NCBI GenBank assembly: GCA_951804945.1
Contig: OX638149.1
Location: 80,290,001-80,354,000 of the forward strand
Reading direction: 5' to 3'
Origin: Podarcis cretensis
Taxonomy: Eukaryota
Length of the DNA stretch: 64,000 nucleotides
Shown piece after piece: positions 22,199-35,900 of the stretch; position 1 is the first letter of the stretch, and every line of letters starts with the position of its first letter. A program made the translations under genes and the position numbers. The notes under the pieces are model-generated. The model did not search any database. It was not told the DNA's origin and saw nothing but the letters and a program-made list of their open reading frames with translations.

Positions 22199-23911
22199 GA
22201 GGTGAAAGATGACACCTTCCCATTCCACATATAAGAGCTGAACGGGATGGAAGCTGAATCTTACTTAAACTGGCAATGGGTCAAGGTCCTCTACTCTATC
22301 TGGAGGAAGCTTGCTATCTTAGAGAGTGCAGATAAAACCCCTTGTCTTGGATCCTAAAGTAAGAGATTGGAAAGCATTTTCTCTTTCCCCTTCTGTCTCT
22401 TGCATATACTTGCTAGCCCTGAAAAGCCCCTCTGTAAACAGCCCCTCCTGAACCGTATGGGATGGGTAGGTAAGAGGGAAATACAGTTGACCTGAATTTG
22501 AATGATTCCGTTTTGGTCAACAGCCTTCTGTAACCCATCACACATTGTTCAGAAGGGACCGCTGAGTCTCTGGAAATATTTTTCAGTGGGTGCTGATAGT
22601 GTGGGGTGGGGAAGAGGGGATGGGAAATGTTCCTTTCTTGAATGTCCTTCAATTCACTTGTCTTATGAGTCATAATGGCTACAATCTACCAGAACCTTTT
22701 GAAAACATTGAAAATCCTGAAACACAAGTTCTCACCACTGTTCATTGATCCTGTACATGCCAACTTTACTGATCTACCAGGAAACTGCATGACTAACCTT
22801 CAAGAAGAGGATCACTATTTGATAAGCCCCATTAATCCATTCTGGGTTCAGAGTTAAATGTACTTGGCTTGAAACAAAAAATGGATCAACATGATTTACT
22901 GAATGCACATTCCCTGTCCCTGTGGTTTACTAGGATAGCAACCTCGACGGCAGATTTGTTGAGTTTAAGTCAAAAATTATTTAAACTTGCTTAATGGATT
23001 TAGGCTGCATGCCTTTCTTCCTACCTGAAACTGAGAAACTGCAGAGCATCTGGGCTGGATGTTTTATGATACCAAATTTCCTTTTACTTCTGCCAGGGCA
23101 TCCTCTAGGGTTTTTTCCCTTCTGTTTTCAAGGACTCTGTAGTTGTGACTGTGCCCTTTGTTCATTGCTACAAAAATGGCAGGTGCAAGTGAAGGGTTGC
23201 ACAGCCTGGGCACACTTCTTAATAATGTGCATGCCTGATGTTCTTAGTGACAGACGGCAGGAGATTAACTTGTTGTGGTCTTCCTAGTTTTGTTCCCTTG
23301 ACATAGCAGAAAGGGGGGGGGAGAGAAAGAGAATTTTCTTTCCCTCTCTTTTACTAAGTATAACCACCTACAAACAGCTGTAGAAGGGATCAGGAAAATG
23401 GCCCAATAATTCTGAGAGCTAATGTTACAGGGCTCTGGAAAAGAAACAGCAAAGAGGGATTTCAGTTTTTCCTCCTTGCTCTGTGAGAGAACATTTGGTC
23501 TTGACTATAAGCTCTCATATTTTACTAAGCACTTTTGTATGGGATGTATTAACCCAGACTAAATTTTTCATAGGACAGTTCCTAGAGCCACTGGTGAGAT
23601 TTGTGGCAATTCTAGGCACACTAAGGAAGAATCCTGAAGTCTGTGCGTCCAAACACAGAGAGAGACGTGTTATCCATCAATACCCATTCTAGATTCCATG
23701 GCAAGTACTTGGCTGTCAGTATGAATTCGGGGGGAAATAGCGTCATTCTGTGCTTTAGGATCCAAGACAATGAGTTTTAACTGCACTCTCTAAGATAGCC
23801 AGCTTCCTCCAGGTAGAGTAGAGGACCTTGACCCATTGCTTGTGTTTAAGTAAGATTCAGCTTCCAGTCCATTCAGCTCTTATATGTGGAATGGGAATGT
23901 GCCATCACCTC
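22199..23911. repeat. Inverted repeat pair, arms 22199-22359 and 23753-23911
   Basis: About 160-bp arms are reverse complements with few mismatches (e.g. cccattccacatataagagctgaa / ttcagctcttatatgtggaatggg). Confidence 0.9.
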
Positions 23912-24144
23912 GTTTGTTTCTTATAGGATTAAATGTGTTTCTGAAGTTGAGGGAGGAGAAAATGTATAAAACTCTACCTAGAACATCATAAGGAGCCAGC
24001 TTGTTGATGAAAGTCCAAGCCTGTGGTGATTAACTAGCTCAACATCAACCAATCAACATCAGATCCTGGTCTAAAATATTCCACTGCTGATCCAAATGGG
24101 AATCCTTATTTCCTCTTCAGGGAGCTTTTGATATTATGGACAGT

Positions 24145-24490
24145 AAGAGACAGCCGATATATTTACTGTGAACATTCTCCAACCAAGCACAGAATGCCTT
24201 GAACCTAGGAAACGCTTGCGATTTCTGCTCGAGCATAAACACATGAATGTACCTGGAAAAAGAATCAATTAGAACCATGAAGTACCTTGCTCCACCCAAA
24301 GAGGGCGCAAGTGGACCAACCAGGTCTGCGTGGACTAGCTGGTAGGGTTTGGAAGCCTGCCTGCTAGACTCCTTGCCTTTTGGAGCAACCTTCACCTTGT
24401 TCTCTGCACAAGATACACATTTCATGTGAAACTTACAGGGTTTGATGTTCAAACCCTGAACCAATTCAGGCATCTTGGCCTGGGAGTCGA
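24145..24490 (-). pseudogene. Ty1/Copia integrase N-terminal fragment
   Basis: CVSCAENK zinc ligand pair and LVHADLVGPL..SLGGARYFMVLIDSFSRY motif; breaks off before the second catalytic Asp. Confidence 0.9.
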
Positions 24491-24498
24491 GCCAAGCA

Positions 24499-24529
24499 GG
24501 CGCAGCGGAAGCGTGCTGGGCCCATAACC
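24499..24529 (+). pseudogene. Initiator tRNA-Met 5'-half fragment (nt 9-39) fused to a Copia U5 end
   Basis: GGCGCAGCGGAAGCGTGCTGGGCCCATAACC is identical to vertebrate tRNA-iMet nt 9-39 as recalled. No 3' half follows, so it is not a tRNA gene. Confidence 0.88.
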
Positions 24530-24710
24530 TGTTGTTGGGATACTGCCAGGGAGACATCAGCCATCAAGGCCCCCACGTCGATTCCAGACAATCCAACGAC
24601 CTCCCTGGCCAATTAGCCAGCCAGAGTTCAAAGACTCTCTGCCGCGGCAAGTTTTCCACATACCTCACAGCAGTCTGTCGCAGTCTTACTCTCCTGTAAG
24701 TGCCGTGAAT

Positions 24711-25102
24711 CTGGGCCCATAACCTGTTGTTGGGATACTGCCAGGGAGACAAAAGCCATCATGCCCCCACGCTGTCTCCGGACGTCCATCGACCTCCCGT
24801 AGAAACACAGTATCAATCAATTAGCGACATGAGCTCCAGAAATAGCTTGCCACATTCCAGAGCTGATGCACGCTCTATCAGCAGAATTCGCACAGCGAAA
24901 GATGCACGCAGGAGAACATTATTTACAACTTTATTCAGTGTTTGTCAGAACAAAGAAAAACATGACTGCCTGCTTCAGTGTCTCAGACACAGAGAAAACG
25001 AAAGCATAGACACAACAGAAACATCCTGTGAACAGGAAATACGCAGACTCTGTGACTCACAAAGCCTGTTCCTTTTTAAGGTGGAACGGAAATATCCTAA
25101 CA
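24711..25102 (-). mobile_element. Copia 5' LTR (24725-25102) plus PBS (24711-24724)
   Basis: On the minus strand TGTTAGG...CAACA, internal AATAAA, followed directly by GGTTATGGGCCCAG, the copia-type PBS complementary to the tRNA-iMet anticodon arm. Confidence 0.85.
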
Positions 25103-25912
25103 GTTTTTTGTTGAGTCAAAAAGACAAAATAATGGAGTTACTTGAAAGAAACAATATGCAAAACTGCAAGGGAGTAAAAAACCCCAATGGAAATAGGTTT
25201 TTTCAAGGATGAAGGAGAATGCACAGAACCTGTAAATCCTGAAATGTACCATTCAATAGTTGGAAGTTTACTATACATTTCATTGTGGAGCAGACCAGAT
25301 TTGAGTTATGCAGTTGGAATACTGAGCAGACTAGTAAGCTGTTCCACAGAAAATGCCTGGAAAGGTTTAAAACGTATTTTCCGGTATTTAAAGCAAACAC
25401 TTGATTATTGTTTAAGACTACCATCTTCAGGGTCTACAAAACTGCAGTGTTACGTTGACAGCGATTGGGCCAACCTGCCTGATAGAAAATCAATTTCTGG
25501 AATGGTATTCAAATTTGGGGATTCCTTAATAGGTTGGAAGTCCAAAAAGCAAGGTATCGTGGCCACATCTTCAACAGAGGCTGAATACTGTGCTTTATCA
25601 GAGTTGTGTAATGAAATAAAATTTTATGTTCAGATCCTCAAAGATTTAGATATACAGTGTGATTATCCAGTTCAAATATGGGAAGACAATCAAGCTGTAA
25701 TAACTTTGGCTGGGTCTGAGCAGTTTAGAAACAAATCAAAACATTTAGAAATTAAATTTCAAAATGTGGCTGAAAATGTGAAGCAAAACCTGATAATGCT
25801 GAAGTATTGTGAGAGTATGCAAAATGTGGCTTATATATTTACAAAAGCACTAACTTTTGAGAAACATGCAGAACTAGTGGCAAAATTAGGAATTGTTGTG
25901 CATGATGTGTAA
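25103..25912 (+). pseudogene. Ty1/Copia pol 3' part (RT C-terminus and RNase H), frameshifted
   Basis: SFLLSQK..., YHSIVGSLLY..RPDLSYAV, YVDSDWA, SSTEAEY, EDNQ, KSKHLEIKF motifs. Frameshift near 25180 and AYIFTK in place of the usual ADIFTK. Confidence 0.92.
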
Positions 25913-25965
25913 ATATGTTTTGTATATGTTTAAAATACTGTTGTTTATGTTTGAATGAGAGTGGG

Positions 25966-26212
25966 TGTTAGGGGACATTCGGCACAGAAACGTGTGTATA
26001 CCTTTAAGAAGTTTCTGGGATTAATTGGCTGTAGCTGGCCTTTGCTATAAAGGAAAAAGCTGAGTTTTGTAGCCTGCCTGCAGGAATAACACCCATCAGA
26101 GTTTGAGTTTATTGTTTAGTAATAAAGTCTTCATTTTAGTTTGGGTTTTTTACACCTATGTCTCCTGGAGTCACTCTGTCCTCTGCCACCAGCTGGAAAT
26201 CCCCCTCCAACA
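25966..26212 (+). mobile_element. Copia 3' LTR, preceded by polypurine tract
   Basis: gagagtggg then TGTTAGG...CCAACA; TATA (ctataaaagg) and AATAAA inside. Confidence 0.8.
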
Positions 26213-26768
26213 TGTGTTGCTGCATTATTTAAAGTCTAATGTATTTCAGCCACTGCTGTTGATGGGGCTTCAGCTACTGTTGAATGCAAAGGCATGACGC
26301 ATTTGGGAACAAATTTCTCTCAGAAATACAGTTACTAACTGTAACTATTCGAGCTTTCAAAAAACATGTGGGGAAATAAAGGGTGAAGAGGACACAAGGC
26401 CAGCGTTGACCAATGTACACTGAGACCTAAGGCCTTTTGCACATTTCCTCATTGTGGGGAGGAATCTGAATACTTTCAGCCAAATGCAGAAAGAATCTCT
26501 GTTCAGACCTTCTTGCTCACTGTGGGAAGGTTGGGGGTGGAGCCAGTAGGGGTGGGGACATGCTGGCATGTGTGGCATCATCGTGCCCTCGTCACACTTC
26601 CTTCTCCAAGGTGCTCTCTGAATGCTTGTATAAGGCTTTATCTTCTGTCCACACAGATATCAAGAAATAGGGTACAGAGAAGTTGTCCCTGATTTGAAAT
26701 GGGAAGGAGAATGGTACAAATATGGCAGATTCTTTGTTCCAGATGTTCCTAATTTAGCTCCTAACCTA

Positions 26769-31874: not shown

Positions 31875-31955
31875 CCACTTTTAATATTGATTTTAAATGG
31901 TTGTAAGCCGCCCTAGGACCTAAAGGTGAAGGGCAGGTAATAGATTGAAATAACA

Positions 31956-31991
<36 letters not shown>
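31875..31991 (+). mobile_element. L2-type 3' end with (AAT)n tail
   Basis: ttgtaagccgccctagg...gaagggcaggt then (AAT)n; similar to the 3' end at 47.6-47.7 kb. Confidence 0.6.
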
Positions 31992-32845
31992 GCTCCCCCC
32001 AAGGATCTTGGGAACTGTAGTTTATCCCTCACAAAACTATAACTCCCAGCAGCACCTGTAACAAACTAAGCTCTCAGGATTCTTTAGTGTGGGGGGAGTA
32101 ATGTGCTTTCAATGCATCTGGGACAATCTTGCCGTTTCTCTACATCTTCCTCAGGAGTTCCCACACAAGGTAGCTTTCTCCAGGAGGACAAAGCTTGCAA
32201 ATCTGAGCCAGCAAGTACAAAATAAAGCATCACAGAACTGTGAGTTCTATGGAGAGTACAAATTCCTTAGCTCATTCTGGCCCCTCAGGGTGGGAATGGT
32301 AAATAGGTGGAGAATGGAAGTTAGTCCAGCTTTACTGCTTGCACTACTATAAATTGGAAACTGCTACCACATGTTAGAAAATTATTTATTTGCTGTTGAG
32401 CAAGAAGCCTCTGAAATCATCGGTCTAATGTAATTAGTTTAGATTACAGATCTGTGCCTTGAGAACGGACTCTTGACAATCTCCGCTTTCCAGTGCCCAC
32501 CCACTTGATTCCCAAATGACTATGCAGCTCTTTCTTTTTTGCTTACGCAAGCAACAGCAGCAGAACATCGAAGCATGATGGCTTTGTTTGCATTAGGACT
32601 GGGTTGGCTTAACAAGGATGTGAAATTTGCCCTCTGTAATCAGAACTGTGCCACGGGTATGTTGTACATCCTTAGCACTAAAGTCCATTTAGTCATGGGG
32701 TCTGTACCACGGATGGGCGAGATGGTTGGTGTGATCACAGGGTTGGGATTTTTCACAGTGATAGAATCTGTGACAATACCAGGTTGCCCAATACTTGTCT
32801 TTGAGAAGGTACAACACATTCCTCCTGCTGCTTCTTGTTGGACAT

Positions 32846-32923
32846 GATATAGATATAGATATAGATATAGATATAGATATAGATATAGATATAGATATAG
32901 ATATAGATATAGATATAGATATA
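32846..32923. repeat. (GATATA)13 microsatellite
   Basis: Perfect hexamer array. Confidence 0.97.
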
Positions 32924-35900
32924 TGCAGTGTGCAGAAGTATATAGTCTGATAAGGTTGGTGGTTGAAAGAATAAAAAGCCTACTCCTGGCAAAACATCCA
33001 TCATGGTGTCATGAGTTTAAAGAAAAGGGTCCCAACACTAGGTCACACAAAGAAAACTGACTGGAGAAGGAATAAAAGGAAATAAAAGCCTGAGAACACA
33101 ACATGCAAGACAACAGTTCTGACCATTCAGACATGTCTTGACTTGCTCATTTTTCTAAGAGAATTTGTGTTGTTTCCCTTCCTTCTAATAGTTTCTGGGA
33201 AACACTTTTATTTTTCTTTAATTGTCTTTTCATGTGCCACATAGCAGCCATCCCCGTTGGCACACAATCCATCTTGCAGTGGTGCCTTGCTTATGTCACA
33301 CAGTGCTCCTAAATCGATAGCCTGCCTCTTTAAAATTCCTACAGTACAGCTGAGAACCAGAAAGAATCCCCAGTGGGAATACTAGGAAATTGGAGATTAT
33401 TTCACAAGCAGAGGTTCCCAAGGTCTGGCCCCAGGAGAACATTCTGGTTTAACAAGGAGTTAATCGTACCATTTTTATGTATGTGAAAACTGCGACTTAA
33501 TGAGGAGTGCTTTCCTTAAGGGGAGGGGGGAATTCAGATTTCTTTTGATTGAATCATAAACAGCTCCCTCAGTACTTAAGGCAATCAAGTTCAAGCTCAA
33601 ATGAGTCCTCCATTTTATCACTGGGATTTTAAAGCGTTGTTCATAGCATCCTTCCAGGCAATGTCTTATCTCAGCAGCTCTTGCAAAGGAGCTCCAACCT
33701 TAACTGTTCATTGCATACAGTTATGAGGTTGAGGGCGGAGTGGGGGAGAGGGAAGACTTTCCCATACTCTCCTTCAAGTCCTATCTTGACAAAACAACAT
33801 GTTTTCCTAGCCAGGGGCGCTGCTGTGCTCCCACTTCCAGCCACATAGCTCCAGCTGTTCTCTAACAAATACAGCCGCAACACACTTCTTTCCTTCTGCA
33901 GCACCCTAATAAACCAAGAGTAAATTACCGAGTGACCTACTTACTGGGGTTGTTTAAATAATCCTCAACGTGGCACTGTAATTTGATGTTTTCCACTGAA
34001 GGATAGAGGGATTTCACATGAAAACGTAAGCTTGCCACAAAAAAGCTGGGAATTAAAGCTAATAATAGTAATAATAATAATGGTGGGAATGGGCATAAAA
34101 TAGCTGCTTGGTTGTTTTGATAAAAAAATAAAAGTTATAGTGTTTTGTTTTTGTTTTAAAGGCAGCGATTGGTTGGCGTATCATGTGGTGTGATTCCATT
34201 ATCGAGTCCAATATAGAAAATTGATTTGCAAGATTAATATCAAATCATTACTTTTGCATCGTCTCTTTGTGACACCATCATTTTTATGGGAAGCCTTTTA
34301 TTTTCTTGCATTTGCTTCTACTCATCTCAAATTGCAATGTGATACACACACCGTACATTTAAAGCACATTACTTTCCCCTGCCCCCTCAGAGAATATACT
34401 GAGAGGTTAGTTTTTACAGGTGCTGGAAGTTATAGTTTTGTGAGGGATACACTACAGTTTGCTGAGTTTTCAGGAGTAACACAAAAGCTGTGGAGACTAG
34501 AGAAGTGAATGATCCCTAGAAATTGGCAGTCCTGCTGCCTCAAGGCCATAGCATGTGGCAACTTATCTTCCCTAGTCCACTGTAGCTTTCGACTTCCCCT
34601 CCTGTTCAGCAAAAAATCCGATTGTTCCTTTGTAGCTGTGGCTGTGCCTGCCCCACACCTAACGTCTTATGGTACCAGTGGTGGGGCAGGTGGACAGGGC
34701 TTGTGGAAAGTGGCCTCATGGGCCAAACTGGGAGCTGTGGCAAGCCCCCCACCCCACCCCCAGTCCCATATAAACCTCTTGATTTTATTCAGTTGAGGAT
34801 ATGTCTAACTGTCTTTGGTTGTCTTTTCTGTCATTTTTATTTATTACATTTATTAGATGCCCCACAACCAAGGCTCTCTGGGTGACAAAACTATATAAAA
34901 TCACAAATCCAATAAAACGCCAGCCAAATAATAGCACAAAAATCATGAAAACAATAAAAAGTACATTAGAGCAGAGATGAAAATGATTTCGGCCACAGCT
35001 GTGTAGTCTAATAACAGACCAGTGTGTATGTCTGGCTGGATTCTTCTCCGCCTGTCCCGACTGCCCAGCCTTACCTGGCCTCTAACTCTTCTCTCAACCT
35101 CCAGCTTCTCTCCACCTTGGTTGCCCCAAGCTAGCAACTGTGTCTCTGTATGTGTTGTGATTCCTACATGGCTATGGTAATTGACTGAATCCTCATGAAT
35201 TCTGACAGAAGGGGTGGCCTTGACCCAGTTCGGATGCCAGCCTGGGGTATGCACCTGCGTGCTTGCCACATGACAAAAGCATTATCCAGTCTTTCATTCA
35301 ACAAGCAAGCCAATGCATTTCGTAGAGGTTTTGCTTTTCTGCTGTGCCATTAAAAACTTCAACCAGACCTGTGCCTTTTCACCAAGGGATTACAGTTCAA
35401 TAACAGTGCAAAGTATAGCGCAGAGCTCAGTTTTCGTTTCCTTTTTATTGCCTGATCCCTAGATGGCTGCATATCGTGCAGTGCCCTAGTCAGGGTGTGG
35501 CCCTAGTAAGCAGGATACAAAGCTGGACGTATGCTGAGTGGAGGCCTATTTGCGGTCTGGCAACGGATGCAAGTCCAGTCCCTTGACTAAGCAAATAATG
35601 CCTCCCAACTTAGTGCTGGCACATTTCCACCAGTTAGTGTAATGTGTTTTCTAGGCAGGGCTGCCCATCACCGTCACCAGCTCCTTCCACTCCCACTTCT
35701 GTACTATGAATATCCAAATCATACACAAAGGAAAGCTATGTCTGTGCTCATAGTCGCTACTATTTTAATAATAAAAAACATGCAGCTGTTACCAACTGTA
35801 CACTGTCCAAACAACAGTTCTTGGTGTGTTGCACTTTCCCAGCACTATATATCCACTATATTTTGTACCTGGGAAAATGCATATCCTCTGATATATTGAG

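What the first reader, a model, noticed from the sequence alone, without database searches (positions are those of the whole stretch)
24495..24605. Fossil of a half-tRNA-primed reverse-transcription intermediate: tRNA-iMet nt 9-39 joined to Copia U5
Seen: the normal PBS (24711-24724) matches 14 nt of tRNA-iMet, but the second copy extends to 31 nt (24499-24529, tRNA nt 9-39), is preceded by AGCA (equals tRNA nt 1-4, possibly chance), and abuts the LTR end exactly at nt 39. Known: Drosophila copia primes with a 39-nt 5' fragment of tRNA-iMet; eukaryotic tRNA-iMet is methylated at G9 (m1G) and G26. The 14-nt PBS ends next to G26 and the long copy ends at G9. Inference: RT read past G26, stalled at m1G9 and switched template, fixing primer plus strong-stop DNA in the germline. 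This would be sequence evidence for half-tRNA priming, the cleavage site and modification stops in an amniote Copia.
Basis: partly seen in the sequence, partly recalled or inferred. Interest (0 to 1): 0.82.

Follow-up and report, generated by a model that had tools for sequence, protein, structure and literature searches.

The report
Copia fossil keeping its tRNA primer
A dead, rearranged Copia retrotransposon in a lizard genome carries a DNA copy of nearly the whole 39-nt front half of initiator tRNA-Met, fused to the end of its LTR and then to mid-integrase; this is a trace of a reverse-transcription error that shows half-tRNA priming in a vertebrate, but it is a variant of known events.

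Summary
Window 24499-24529 (+) equals tRNA-iMet nt 9-39 exactly. AGCA (nt 1-4) comes just before it, so 35 of the 39 nt of the 5' half are present, with one 4-nt gap at the m1G9 site. The copy abuts the Copia LTR end (CAACA on the minus strand) at nt 39.

On the element's strand the layout is a full 378-nt LTR, a 14-nt PBS, 105 nt of leader, the last 76 nt of U5 (84% like the LTR), the tRNA copy, 14 nt of filler, then integrase from about residue 441. gag and protease are missing. RT did not stop at G9. The copy resumes and reaches tRNA nt 1, and the switch happened there. A 12-nt inverted repeat straddles both junctions (1 of 3000 shuffles), which ties them to one event.

In reads of four related species the high-copy form is LTR, 14-nt PBS, leader. 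Among 142 Copia PBS sites from other eukaryotes, most matches end at 14 nt. At least nine lineages, some structurally intact, pair on to tRNA nt 10, and one repeats the lizard's layout of AGCA, one base, then nt 10-39. Long tRNA matches can therefore be heritable.

Verdict: new variant of a known kind, moderate interest. The junction is not yet confirmed by independent reads.

The parts
24149..24480 (-). Integrase fragment of Copia element A. It runs from the end of the N-terminal zinc-binding region into the first part of the catalytic core and stops at single-copy DNA near 24148/24149.
   Evidence: tblastn: 24479->24156 matches residues 441-548 of Copia polyprotein P0121 (60%, E 2e-41), and residues ~420-550 of 1300-aa Copia polyproteins. 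P0121, P0125 and P0247 carry Retrotran_gag_2, Pol_BBD and rve; the latter two also carry RVT_2. Pfam rve is sub-threshold on the fragment itself. A 253-nt multi-copy contig (depth 340 against 20 for single copy) ends exactly at 24480. Flank contigs end at 24148 or 24191.
24481..24494 (-). 14-nt filler between tRNA nt 1 and integrase. In element sense it reads TGGCT, a near-repeat of TGCT (tRNA nt 4-1), then CGACTCCCA, an inverted copy of the leader/U5 junction.
   Evidence: Direct reading. Inverted repeat I1, with shuffle test p about 3e-4. No exact second copy in the window.
24495..24529 (-). DNA copy of the tRNA-iMet 5' half. The + strand carries the tRNA sense, nt 1-4 then nt 9-39. The element strand carries its complement directly after the LTR end.
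   Evidence: 31/31 match to the human iMet sequence from PMC8216282. Alignment A1.
24530..24605 (-). Last 76 nt of a Copia LTR (U5 end, ending in CAACAACA). It is of a different subfamily type than the full LTR next to it.
   Evidence: 86.7% identity to 24711-24798. In reads, about 70% of the depth laid here agrees with the window at its variable sites, and copy number is moderate.
24606..24710 (-). First 105 nt of the 5' leader that follows the ordinary PBS in the high-copy family.
   Evidence: Contigs of other copies continue from the PBS into this stretch. One covers 24609-24714 with a 12-nt insertion, and high depth reaches down to about 24656. It is not LTR-like (score 16 against a shuffle mean of 15.4).
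24711..24724 (-). Ordinary 14-nt PBS, complementary to tRNA-iMet nt 26-39 (standard positions 27-40).
   Evidence: High-copy context in reads, with no variant above 10% at 24697-24718.
24725..25102 (-). Full-length 378-nt LTR of element A (TGTTAGG...CAACAACA, with AATAAA inside).
   Evidence: Very high depth between 24725 and 25106. At both ends, 12-23 contigs per run continue into unrelated flanks (agreement 0.39-0.44). Sequence.
25103..25915 (+). Element B, an older, lower-copy Copia of another family on the opposite strand. It has the C-terminal part of RT plus RNase H (intact 241-aa ORF) and is cut at its 5' side exactly by the start of A's LTR.
   Evidence: tblastn with P0001 (Podarcis, 49%) and with full polyproteins, residues ~1060-1300. 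RT homology starts at 25102/25103. Depth falls about 200-fold at 25107.
25967..26214 (+). Probable 3' LTR of element B (TGTTAGGGG...CTCCAACA, with TATAAA and AATAAA). It is unrelated to A's LTR. Boundaries are approximate.
   Evidence: Direct reading. Alignment to A's LTR scores below the shuffle mean.
24475..24486 (.). Left arm of a 12-nt inverted repeat (TTGGCCTGGGAG). It spans the integrase/filler junction.
24601..24612 (.). Right arm of the inverted repeat (CTCCCTGGCCAA). It spans the U5-fragment/leader junction.

Best explanation
The 35 nt at 24495-24529 are a DNA copy of the 39-nt 5' half of initiator tRNA-Met that primed minus-strand synthesis of a Copia element on the window's minus strand.

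Shown:
- The copy is joined to the LTR end at tRNA nt 39.
- It covers nt 39 to 9/10 and nt 4/5 to 1.
- It is followed by 14 nt of filler and then by mid-integrase.
- Upstream lie only 76 nt of U5, preceded by a complete LTR, a 14-nt PBS and 105 nt of leader.
- A 12-nt inverted repeat spans both junctions.

Inferred pathway:
1. A minus-strand DNA, 76 nt long and still attached to its primer, jumped early into the leader of a co-packaged RNA of a sister subfamily. From there it was completed through PBS, U5, R and U3.
2. The plus strand copied this template. It ran past the usual 14-nt boundary next to G26 and through the D arm, lost 4 nt at the m1G9 site, and reached tRNA nt 1, where the template ends.
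3. Its stranded 3' end stuttered on the tRNA end, copied a few bases of the nearby junction in inverted sense, and re-annealed through GGCCAA to the minus strand inside integrase. That deleted gag, protease and the integrase N-terminus.
4. The defective two-LTR DNA was integrated into an older Copia (B).
5. A later genomic deletion removed A's 3' part and B's 5' part.
For: - Exact 31-nt match plus AGCA to iMet.
- The family's high-copy form is LTR, 14-nt PBS, leader, so the extra letters are not the family's PBS.
- The stretch that follows is integrase from residue ~441 of Copia polyproteins, not gag.
- The junction lies within 0-5 nt of the tRNA 5' end, where a template would run out. A random deletion breakpoint would rarely fall there.
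- The inverted repeat that straddles both junctions was reached in 1 of 3000 shuffles, which ties the two junctions to one molecule.
- The only defect in the tRNA copy lies at or next to G9. Mammalian iMet carries m1G9, and tRNA-seq protocols remove such methyl groups to let RT pass (PMC11347157).
- L109, from an unrelated eukaryote, shows the same layout of AGCA, one base, then nt 10-39. Chance of AGCA at that offset in one or more of the 8 other sites with D-arm complementarity is about 0.03.
- A's LTR start meets B's RT exactly at the LTR's TG end.
- Precedent: in HIV-1, m1A58 stops plus-strand strong-stop synthesis, and read-through gives DNA that no longer pairs after transfer (PMC8599865).
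Against: - The two U5 copies are only 84% alike, while the integrase piece is within 1 of 147 letters of a ~17-copy form. The model therefore needs two different subfamily templates in one particle.
- No contig listed bridges 24480-24530, so the junction rests on the assembly alone.
- The 3' half of element A is gone and no target duplication can be checked, so integrase-mediated entry is not shown.
- Long tRNA matches occur in structurally normal Copia elements elsewhere (L109, L060, L099). One contig of species G starts its match at nt 10 with another flank, so the long copy could be inherited.
- Ty1 is reported to inherit its PBS from the RNA rather than from the tRNA (Lauermann and Boeke 1997, as cited in PMC7472051). 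If this also holds for Copia-type elements generally, which is my inference, copying of the primer is not their normal route.
- The filler also resembles a U5 stretch in direct sense, so its origin is ambiguous.
Confidence: 0.55

Rival explanations
1. End-joining patchwork. Free Copia cDNA fragments were captured at a chromosomal break and joined by microhomology-mediated (polymerase-theta-type) end joining, not inside a particle. The fragments included a strong-stop species still carrying its tRNA primer, which was copied into DNA. The tRNA copy is still a primer fossil, but the junctions are the host's repair work.
For: The fragments come from at least two families and two orientations, with no enclosing target duplication and one end in mid-integrase next to single-copy DNA. 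The short filler with an inverted templated patch and 5-6 nt microhomologies (TGGCC, GGCCAA) is typical of that repair route (own knowledge). Capture of Ty1 cDNA at breaks is known in yeast (Moore and Haber 1996; Teng et al. 1996; own knowledge).
Against: A's LTR begins exactly at its TG end where it meets B, as integration would give. The segment from the LTR start to tRNA nt 1 is one continuous, colinear piece that matches the natural ends of a plus strand. It needs several independent fragments at one break.
Confidence: 0.2
2. Inherited long PBS. A lizard subfamily has an ordinary, heritable 30-35-nt tRNA-complementary PBS (as L109 has), and this locus is a recombined and internally deleted copy of it. 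The read-through happened in an ancestor, not here.
For: Long or bipartite complementarity up to tRNA nt 10 occurs in 9 of 81 Copia lineages, several in a normal LTR-PBS-gag order. L109 has the same layout of AGCA, one base, then nt 10-39 in a normal setting. Species G has a contig whose match starts at nt 10 with a different flank. The U5 fragment is of its own subfamily type with moderate copy number.
Against: The breakpoint would have to fall by chance within 5 nt of the end of the tRNA-derived letters. The filler behind it is tied to the other junction by the inverted repeat. The species-G contig lacks AGCA and the filler, so it is a different junction. The high-copy form has 14 nt.
Confidence: 0.15
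3. Independent nested insertions and deletions of several ordinary Copia copies, with the long tRNA match arising in some other way, such as gene conversion from a tRNA gene, or with AGCA by chance.
For: Element A clearly sits inside element B, and a large deletion is needed in any model.
Against: No ordinary insertion or deletion series puts 17+4 further tRNA letters exactly at the nt-39/LTR joint. There is no tRNA gene in the window. The coupling of the two junctions argues against independent events.
Confidence: 0.07
4. Assembly artefact. The repeat-rich stretch was mis-joined.
For: The region is made of very high-copy repeats, and no listed contig bridges the junction.
Against: A mis-join would not create a precise primer/LTR joint with tRNA letters that exist nowhere else in the family's common form. 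The stretch is held, at least in part, by runs of seven organism labels and eight studies.
Confidence: 0.03

Closest known systems
Drosophila copia half-tRNA priming (Kikuchi, Ando and Shiba 1986; cited as 'half-tRNA' in PMC5371799)
   Same: The PBS pairs with an internal stretch of initiator tRNA-Met that ends at nt 39, directly behind the LTR end. The primer is the 5' fragment of the tRNA.
   Different: The host is a lizard. The evidence here is a genomic DNA copy of the rest of the fragment, nt 1-4 and 9-25, not RNA biochemistry. The cleavage that makes the half is not observed.
Yeast Ty5, primed from the anticodon stem-loop of tRNA-iMet (Ke et al. 1999, cited in PMC5371799)
   Same: Copia-type element primed from an internal 3' end in the anticodon region of iMet.
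   Different: The yeast tRNA sequence and cut position differ. No DNA copy of the upstream tRNA part is described there, to my knowledge.
Retroviral plus-strand strong-stop read-through of the primer tRNA. In HIV-1, m1A58 is the first stop and m5Um54 the second (PMC8599865). A cloned MLV circle carries tRNA sequence between the LTRs (Colicelli and Goff 1986, own knowledge).
   Same: The plus strand copies the primer beyond the PBS. Methylated bases set the stops. Read-through leaves a tail that cannot pair in the second transfer. In HIV-1, genome complementarity is conserved up to the second stop, which parallels the Copia lineages that pair up to nt 10.
   Different: Here the primer is a 5' half, not the tRNA 3' end. 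The candidate stops are G26 and m1G9. The product is fixed in a germline and resolved by a switch into integrase.
Bipartite or extended PBS of Ty1 and Ty3 (PMC5371799)
   Same: Extra boxes complementary to other parts of tRNA-iMet sit next to the PBS. This compares with the D-arm box GCGCAG[T/C]GG found 5-7 nt from the 14-nt PBS in L093, L099, L017 and L010.
   Different: Ty1 and Ty3 use the tRNA 3' end, and their boxes pair with other arms. In the lizard locus the extension is contiguous and sits at a rearrangement, not in a working leader.
Capture of Ty1 cDNA at chromosomal breaks (Moore and Haber 1996; Teng, Kim and Gabriel 1996; own knowledge)
   Same: Patchworks of retroelement cDNA pieces without target duplication, joined by microhomology.
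   Different: Not shown here. It is kept as a rival route for how the pieces were joined.

Membership tests
Ty1/copia LTR retrotransposon (Pseudoviridae) | LTR bounded by TG...CA and present as a discrete repeat | tested here: met
   24725-25102 reads TGTTAGG...CAACAACA on the minus strand. Both ends are repeat boundaries with variable flanks in four runs.
Ty1/copia LTR retrotransposon (Pseudoviridae) | Copia-type polyprotein with integrase upstream of RT (gag, PR, IN, RT, RH) | tested here: inconclusive
   The fragments match Copia polyproteins at IN residues ~441-548 and at RT/RH residues ~1060-1300. Their relatives carry Retrotran_gag_2, rve and then RVT_2. In this locus the two fragments belong to different elements, so the order cannot be read here.
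Half-tRNA (copia-type) priming | PBS directly behind the 5' LTR, complementary to an internal stretch of tRNA-iMet that ends at nt 39 rather than to a tRNA 3' end | tested here: met
   24711-24724 equals nt 26-39, and 24499-24529 equals nt 9-39. Both abut the LTR end.
Half-tRNA (copia-type) priming | The primer is a 39-nt 5' fragment with the native tRNA 5' end | tested here: inconclusive
   The DNA copy holds nt 1-4 after a 4-nt gap, and L109 repeats that layout. This fits a primer that starts at nt 1. The RNA itself was not observed, because no small-RNA data were available.
Plus-strand read-through of the primer tRNA (aberrant strong-stop product) | The tRNA complement continues beyond the element's own PBS, contiguous with U5 | tested here: met
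   There are 17+4 extra tRNA letters beyond the 14-nt PBS that the high-copy family carries.
Plus-strand read-through of the primer tRNA (aberrant strong-stop product) | The copy ends or is damaged at a modified base | tested here: inconclusive
   The only defect is a 4-nt gap at nt 5-8 or 6-9, beside or including G9. m1G9 on iMet is documented for mouse and human (PMC11347157) but not for this lizard. Four metagenomic lineages end their match exactly at nt 10.
Plus-strand read-through of the primer tRNA (aberrant strong-stop product) | The product is aberrant and not the lineage's normal, heritable PBS | tested here: inconclusive
   The context is aberrant, with integrase following. But heritable long forms exist elsewhere, and one other nt-10 junction exists in species G. 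A genome-wide tabulation was not possible with these tools.
Bipartite or extended PBS (Ty1/Ty3 type) | Extra tRNA-complementary box in a working leader, conserved among copies | tested here: not met
   This applies to the lizard locus only. The extension is followed by filler and integrase, and the family's common leader next to the PBS does not match the tRNA. The feature is met in metagenomic L093 and L099.

The most novel reading that the evidence does not exclude
Across eukaryotes, the length of the half-tRNA PBS of Copia elements is set in steps by two methylated bases of tRNA-iMet. The common 14-nt form ends next to G26, and a recurrent ~30-nt form ends at nt 10, next to m1G9. Rare copies that pass m1G9 carry a reproducible scar: nt 5-8 are lost, one base stands at position 9, and then nt 4-1 follow. 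This scar is seen both in this lizard and in an unrelated eukaryote (L109). Genomic PBS regions would then be a natural record of primer identity, primer 5' end, cleavage site and RT behaviour at tRNA modifications. Primer read-through would be a recurring source both of heritable extended PBSs and of rearranged defective elements.
Probability: 0.3. Interest if true: 0.7.

Novelty: new variant of a known kind. Interest (0 to 1): 0.55.

Why it matters
Half-tRNA priming is known from biochemistry on Drosophila copia and genetics on yeast Ty5. For vertebrate Copia elements it has so far only been inferred from short PBS matches.

This locus holds a DNA copy of almost the whole primer fragment. 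It fixes the 3' end at nt 39 and points to a native 5' end. It also shows what the reverse transcriptase did when it ran on through the tRNA: a 4-nt loss at the m1G9 site, then a microhomology jump that deleted gag and protease.

Together with the survey of 142 Copia PBS sites, it suggests a simple, testable rule. Matches stop next to G26, or else at nt 10 next to m1G9. This parallels the first and second stops described for HIV-1. It also offers a route by which non-autonomous deletion derivatives and extended PBSs arise.

It does not reveal a new kind of element or mechanism.

Tried and rejected
- Rfam and ARAGORN see no tRNA here. A truncated half is below their reach, so the match was shown by direct alignment instead.
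- The word search with the integrase fragment was blank. This says nothing, because of its length window. The full representative search then placed the fragment in Copia integrase.
- Viral contigs held no PBS-plus-LTR-end match. The long 28-nt pattern found nothing in genome contigs. The 19-mer there gave 20 more sites, all with 0-2 nt of extension.
- The search of earlier findings by sequence was blank.
- I tested whether the 105 nt between the two LTR-end copies are a diverged LTR. They are not (score 16 against shuffle mean 15.4).
- I tested whether A's LTR and B's LTR are related. They are not.
- I considered that the 76 nt might be a complete R-U5, that is, a full strong-stop DNA. I rejected this because AATAAA lies about 210 nt before the LTR end and no promoter-like box lies before position -76 (reading).
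- I considered an integrase-made insertion of the 125-nt unit with a 5-nt target duplication (TGGCC on both sides). I rejected it because the unit's ends are not LTR ends and the repeat reads better as a 12-nt inverted repeat.
- The fold of the unit as single-stranded DNA is no more stable than shuffles (z -0.4), so no structural role is claimed.
- Read laying gave no contig that bridges the junction, so independent support is open.
- Whether species G and D lack the whole patch could not be settled. Their flank contigs leave the window at 24148 and run on for more than 860 nt. The single read-laying run covered only 24000-25200.

Full report
**Observation**

On the + strand, 24499-24529 is identical over 31 nt to nt 9-39 of the vertebrate initiator tRNA-Met. 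AGCA (tRNA nt 1-4) comes just before it. Because nt 5, 9 and 10 are all G, the same letters also read as nt 1-5 plus nt 10-39. Either way, 35 of the 39 nt of the 5' half are present, with one 4-nt gap (nt 5-8 or 6-9).

The next base starts TGTTGTTGGG, the reverse complement of a Copia LTR end, so the element lies on the minus strand and the tRNA letters occupy the PBS position. A second copy of the LTR end at 24725 is preceded by only 14 tRNA letters (nt 26-39). The two LTR-end copies are 86.7% alike over 90 nt. There is no tRNA gene in the window, and Rfam reports no tRNA hit for 24300-24900. Seventeen further exact letters are about 6e-11 by chance.

**Anatomy on the element's strand**

- A full 378-nt LTR, 25102 to 24725. 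Reads of four related species show a very high-copy repeat there, with unrelated flanks at both ends (sequence).
- The 14-nt PBS, 24724-24711.
- 105 nt of leader, 24710-24606. Other copies share it behind the PBS and it is not LTR-like.
- The last 76 nt of U5, 24605-24530, only 84% like the LTR beside it.
- The tRNA complement, 24529-24495.
- 14 nt of filler, 24494-24481.
- Integrase, 24480 to about 24149.

The integrase fragment matches residues 441-548 of a Copia polyprotein at 60% (E 2e-41), and residues ~420-550 of 1300-residue Copia polyproteins whose Pfam content is gag, beta-barrel protease, integrase, RT. About 440 residues of gag, protease and the integrase N-terminus are therefore missing between the tRNA copy and what follows it. 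A multi-copy contig of this integrase stretch ends exactly at 24480, which fixes that junction. Left of about 24149 the DNA is single-copy.

To the right, A's LTR start meets the RT of another Copia (B) at 25102/25103. B lies on the + strand and has RT/RNase H, an intact 241-aa ORF, and its own unrelated LTR near 25967-26214. The simplest reading is that A was inserted into B and that a later deletion removed A's 3' part and B's 5' part.

**The two junctions are linked**

A 12-nt inverted repeat with 11 of 12 complementary bases (24475-24486 and 24601-24612) spans both the integrase/filler junction and the U5-fragment/leader junction. Only 1 of 3000 shuffles gave such a repeat across both junction points.

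Read in element sense, the filler is TGGCT, then CGACTCCCA, and it runs into GGCCAA. TGGCT nearly repeats TGCT, the copy of tRNA nt 4-1. CGACTCCCA is an inverted copy of the leader/U5 junction. GGCCAA is shared with integrase. It also means the leader/U5 junction existed when the tRNA/integrase junction was made. The filler also has a weaker direct resemblance to a U5 stretch, so its origin is not certain.

**Is the long match the family's normal PBS?**

In the runs of four organisms, depth and variant tables show that the high-copy form is LTR, 14-nt PBS, then the leader seen at 24697-24710. No alternative letters above 10% appear there. The U5 fragment is of a separate type with moderate copy number.

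The integrase piece differs by 1 of 147 letters from a ~17-copy form, so the locus is young. The 16% difference between the two U5 copies therefore reflects two subfamilies, not decay.

One contig of species G begins its match exactly at 24500 (tRNA nt 10) and has a different sequence before it. At least one other nt-10 junction therefore exists in the group.

**Survey outside the lizards**

An exact scan for the 14-nt PBS plus TGTTG gave 122 sites on 120 metagenome contigs and 20 more in contaminated MAGs. None is a tRNA gene. Of the sites with at least 4.5 kb downstream, 19 of 25 have Copia RT/RNase H in the right sense.

Identity to the tRNA beyond the 14 nt, over all 142 sites:

| Extra nt matching the tRNA | Sites |
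|---|---|
| 0 | 112 |
| 1 | 17 |
| 2 | 8 |
| 4 | 1 |
| 6 | 3 |
| 9 | 1 |

Because the search pattern itself contains the full 14-nt PBS, shorter matches could not appear in this table. For most lineages the match ends at nt 26, next to G26.

A distinct minority carries the D-arm letters GCGCAG[T/C]G within 32 nt: 9 of 81 LTR-end clusters, against 0.6% of control windows.

- In L060, L118 and L082 the match runs to nt 10 and stops there. L068 carries the same tract with two mismatches.
- L093, L099, L017 and L010 have a split form. L099 encodes an unbroken 1666-residue polyprotein.
- L109 has nt 10-39, then one base, then AGCA. This is the lizard's layout, and in L109 it sits in a normal LTR-PBS-gag setting.

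Extended complementarity up to nt 10 is therefore an ordinary, heritable state in some Copia lineages. The AGCA in the lizard is unlikely to be chance (about 0.03 for its recurrence at the same offset).

**Mechanism**

Established background:
- In retroviruses the plus strand copies the primer up to a methylated base. In HIV-1, m1A58 is the first stop and m5Um54 a second. Genome complementarity is conserved up to the second stop, and read-through beyond it leaves DNA that cannot pair after transfer (PMC8599865).
- Ty1 is reported to inherit its PBS from the RNA (PMC7472051).
- Mammalian iMet carries m1G9 made by TRMT10A (PMC11347157).
- G26 is usually methylated by Trm1/TRMT1 (PMC10275265).

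Against this background I read the locus as a plus strand that copied a minus strand still joined to its half-tRNA primer. It passed G26 and the D arm, lost 4 nt at the m1G9 site, and reached nt 1. There it switched by microhomology into integrase.

The 76-nt U5 piece behind a complete LTR-PBS-leader is best explained by an early jump of the short minus strand into the leader of a co-packaged RNA of a sister subfamily. These steps are inferred. What is shown is the order of the pieces, the exact joints, the gap position and the linked junctions.

The main rival for how the pieces were joined is host end joining of free cDNA fragments at a break. The main rival for the origin of the long match is inheritance from a long-PBS subfamily. 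Against that second rival, the breakpoint lies within 5 nt of the end of the tRNA letters, and the filler is tied to the other junction.

**Comparison and novelty**

Half-tRNA priming is known from Drosophila copia and Ty5 (PMC5371799). Primer read-through is known from retroviruses. What is new:
- a germline DNA copy of almost the whole half-tRNA in a vertebrate Copia;
- the scar at the m1G9 site, which recurs in an unrelated eukaryote;
- the stepwise PBS lengths in the survey.

I rate it a new variant of a known kind, of moderate interest.

**Limits**

- The junction is not confirmed by independent reads.
- The lizard's own tRNA and its modifications were not examined.
- No family-wide table could be made.

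Earlier notes of this scan on the same genome report a patchwork at this site, other iMet half-tRNA PBSs of 14-23 nt, a second iMet-complementary box, a tRNA-half look-alike next to another U5, and a Copia with hairpin ends. I used them as leads only.

Noticed in passing
window 24719-24720: In run X5 (organism D), 69% of the depth carries other letters at two positions of the 14-nt PBS: A>G and T>A in tRNA sense, which alters the CAT anticodon letters. In X19 the figure is 44-52%. A major subfamily in related species therefore has a PBS that no longer matches iMet perfectly.
   Followed up: no
window 25187-25912 (+) and 25967-26214: Element B keeps an unbroken 241-aa RT/RNase H ORF. Its best protein relative is only 51% identical (Podarcis raffonei). 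Its own LTR carries TATAAA and AATAAA. Its copy number in reads is roughly 10 times single copy, far below that of family A.
   Followed up: partly
window 24117-24557 (-): A 146-aa ORF starts at an ATG in the U5 fragment and runs in frame through the tRNA copy and the filler into integrase. A parallel 62-aa ORF starts at the same ATG of the full LTR. Probably chance.
   Followed up: no
window 23753-23906 and 22208-22359: A pair of 154-nt inverted repeats, 91% identical and about 1.4 kb apart, in the single-copy flank left of the Copia patch. Possibly two copies of a short interspersed element.
   Followed up: no
   Followed up: no
loci L093:6157-6225 and L099:461-520 (metagenome contigs): Copia elements with a split primer site: the 14-nt iMet box, 5 unrelated nt, then a 9-nt box complementary to the tRNA D arm (nt 10-18). 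L099 encodes an unbroken 1666-residue polyprotein. This looks like a bipartite PBS for a half-tRNA primer.
   Followed up: partly
locus L109:1026-1085 (metagenome contig): A Copia element with a normal gag-protease ORF whose PBS region is the complement of tRNA nt 39-10, one base, then nt 4-1. The layout is the same as in the lizard locus.
   Followed up: partly
window 24000-24148 versus runs X19 and X5: In organisms G and D the single-copy flank contigs (about 1140 nt) match up to 24148 and then run on for more than 860 nt that are unlike 24149-25200. The whole Copia patch may be absent or different at this site in those species.
   Followed up: no
window 32834-32929 and 31938-31996: (GATATA)n and (AAT)n microsatellites.
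   Followed up: no
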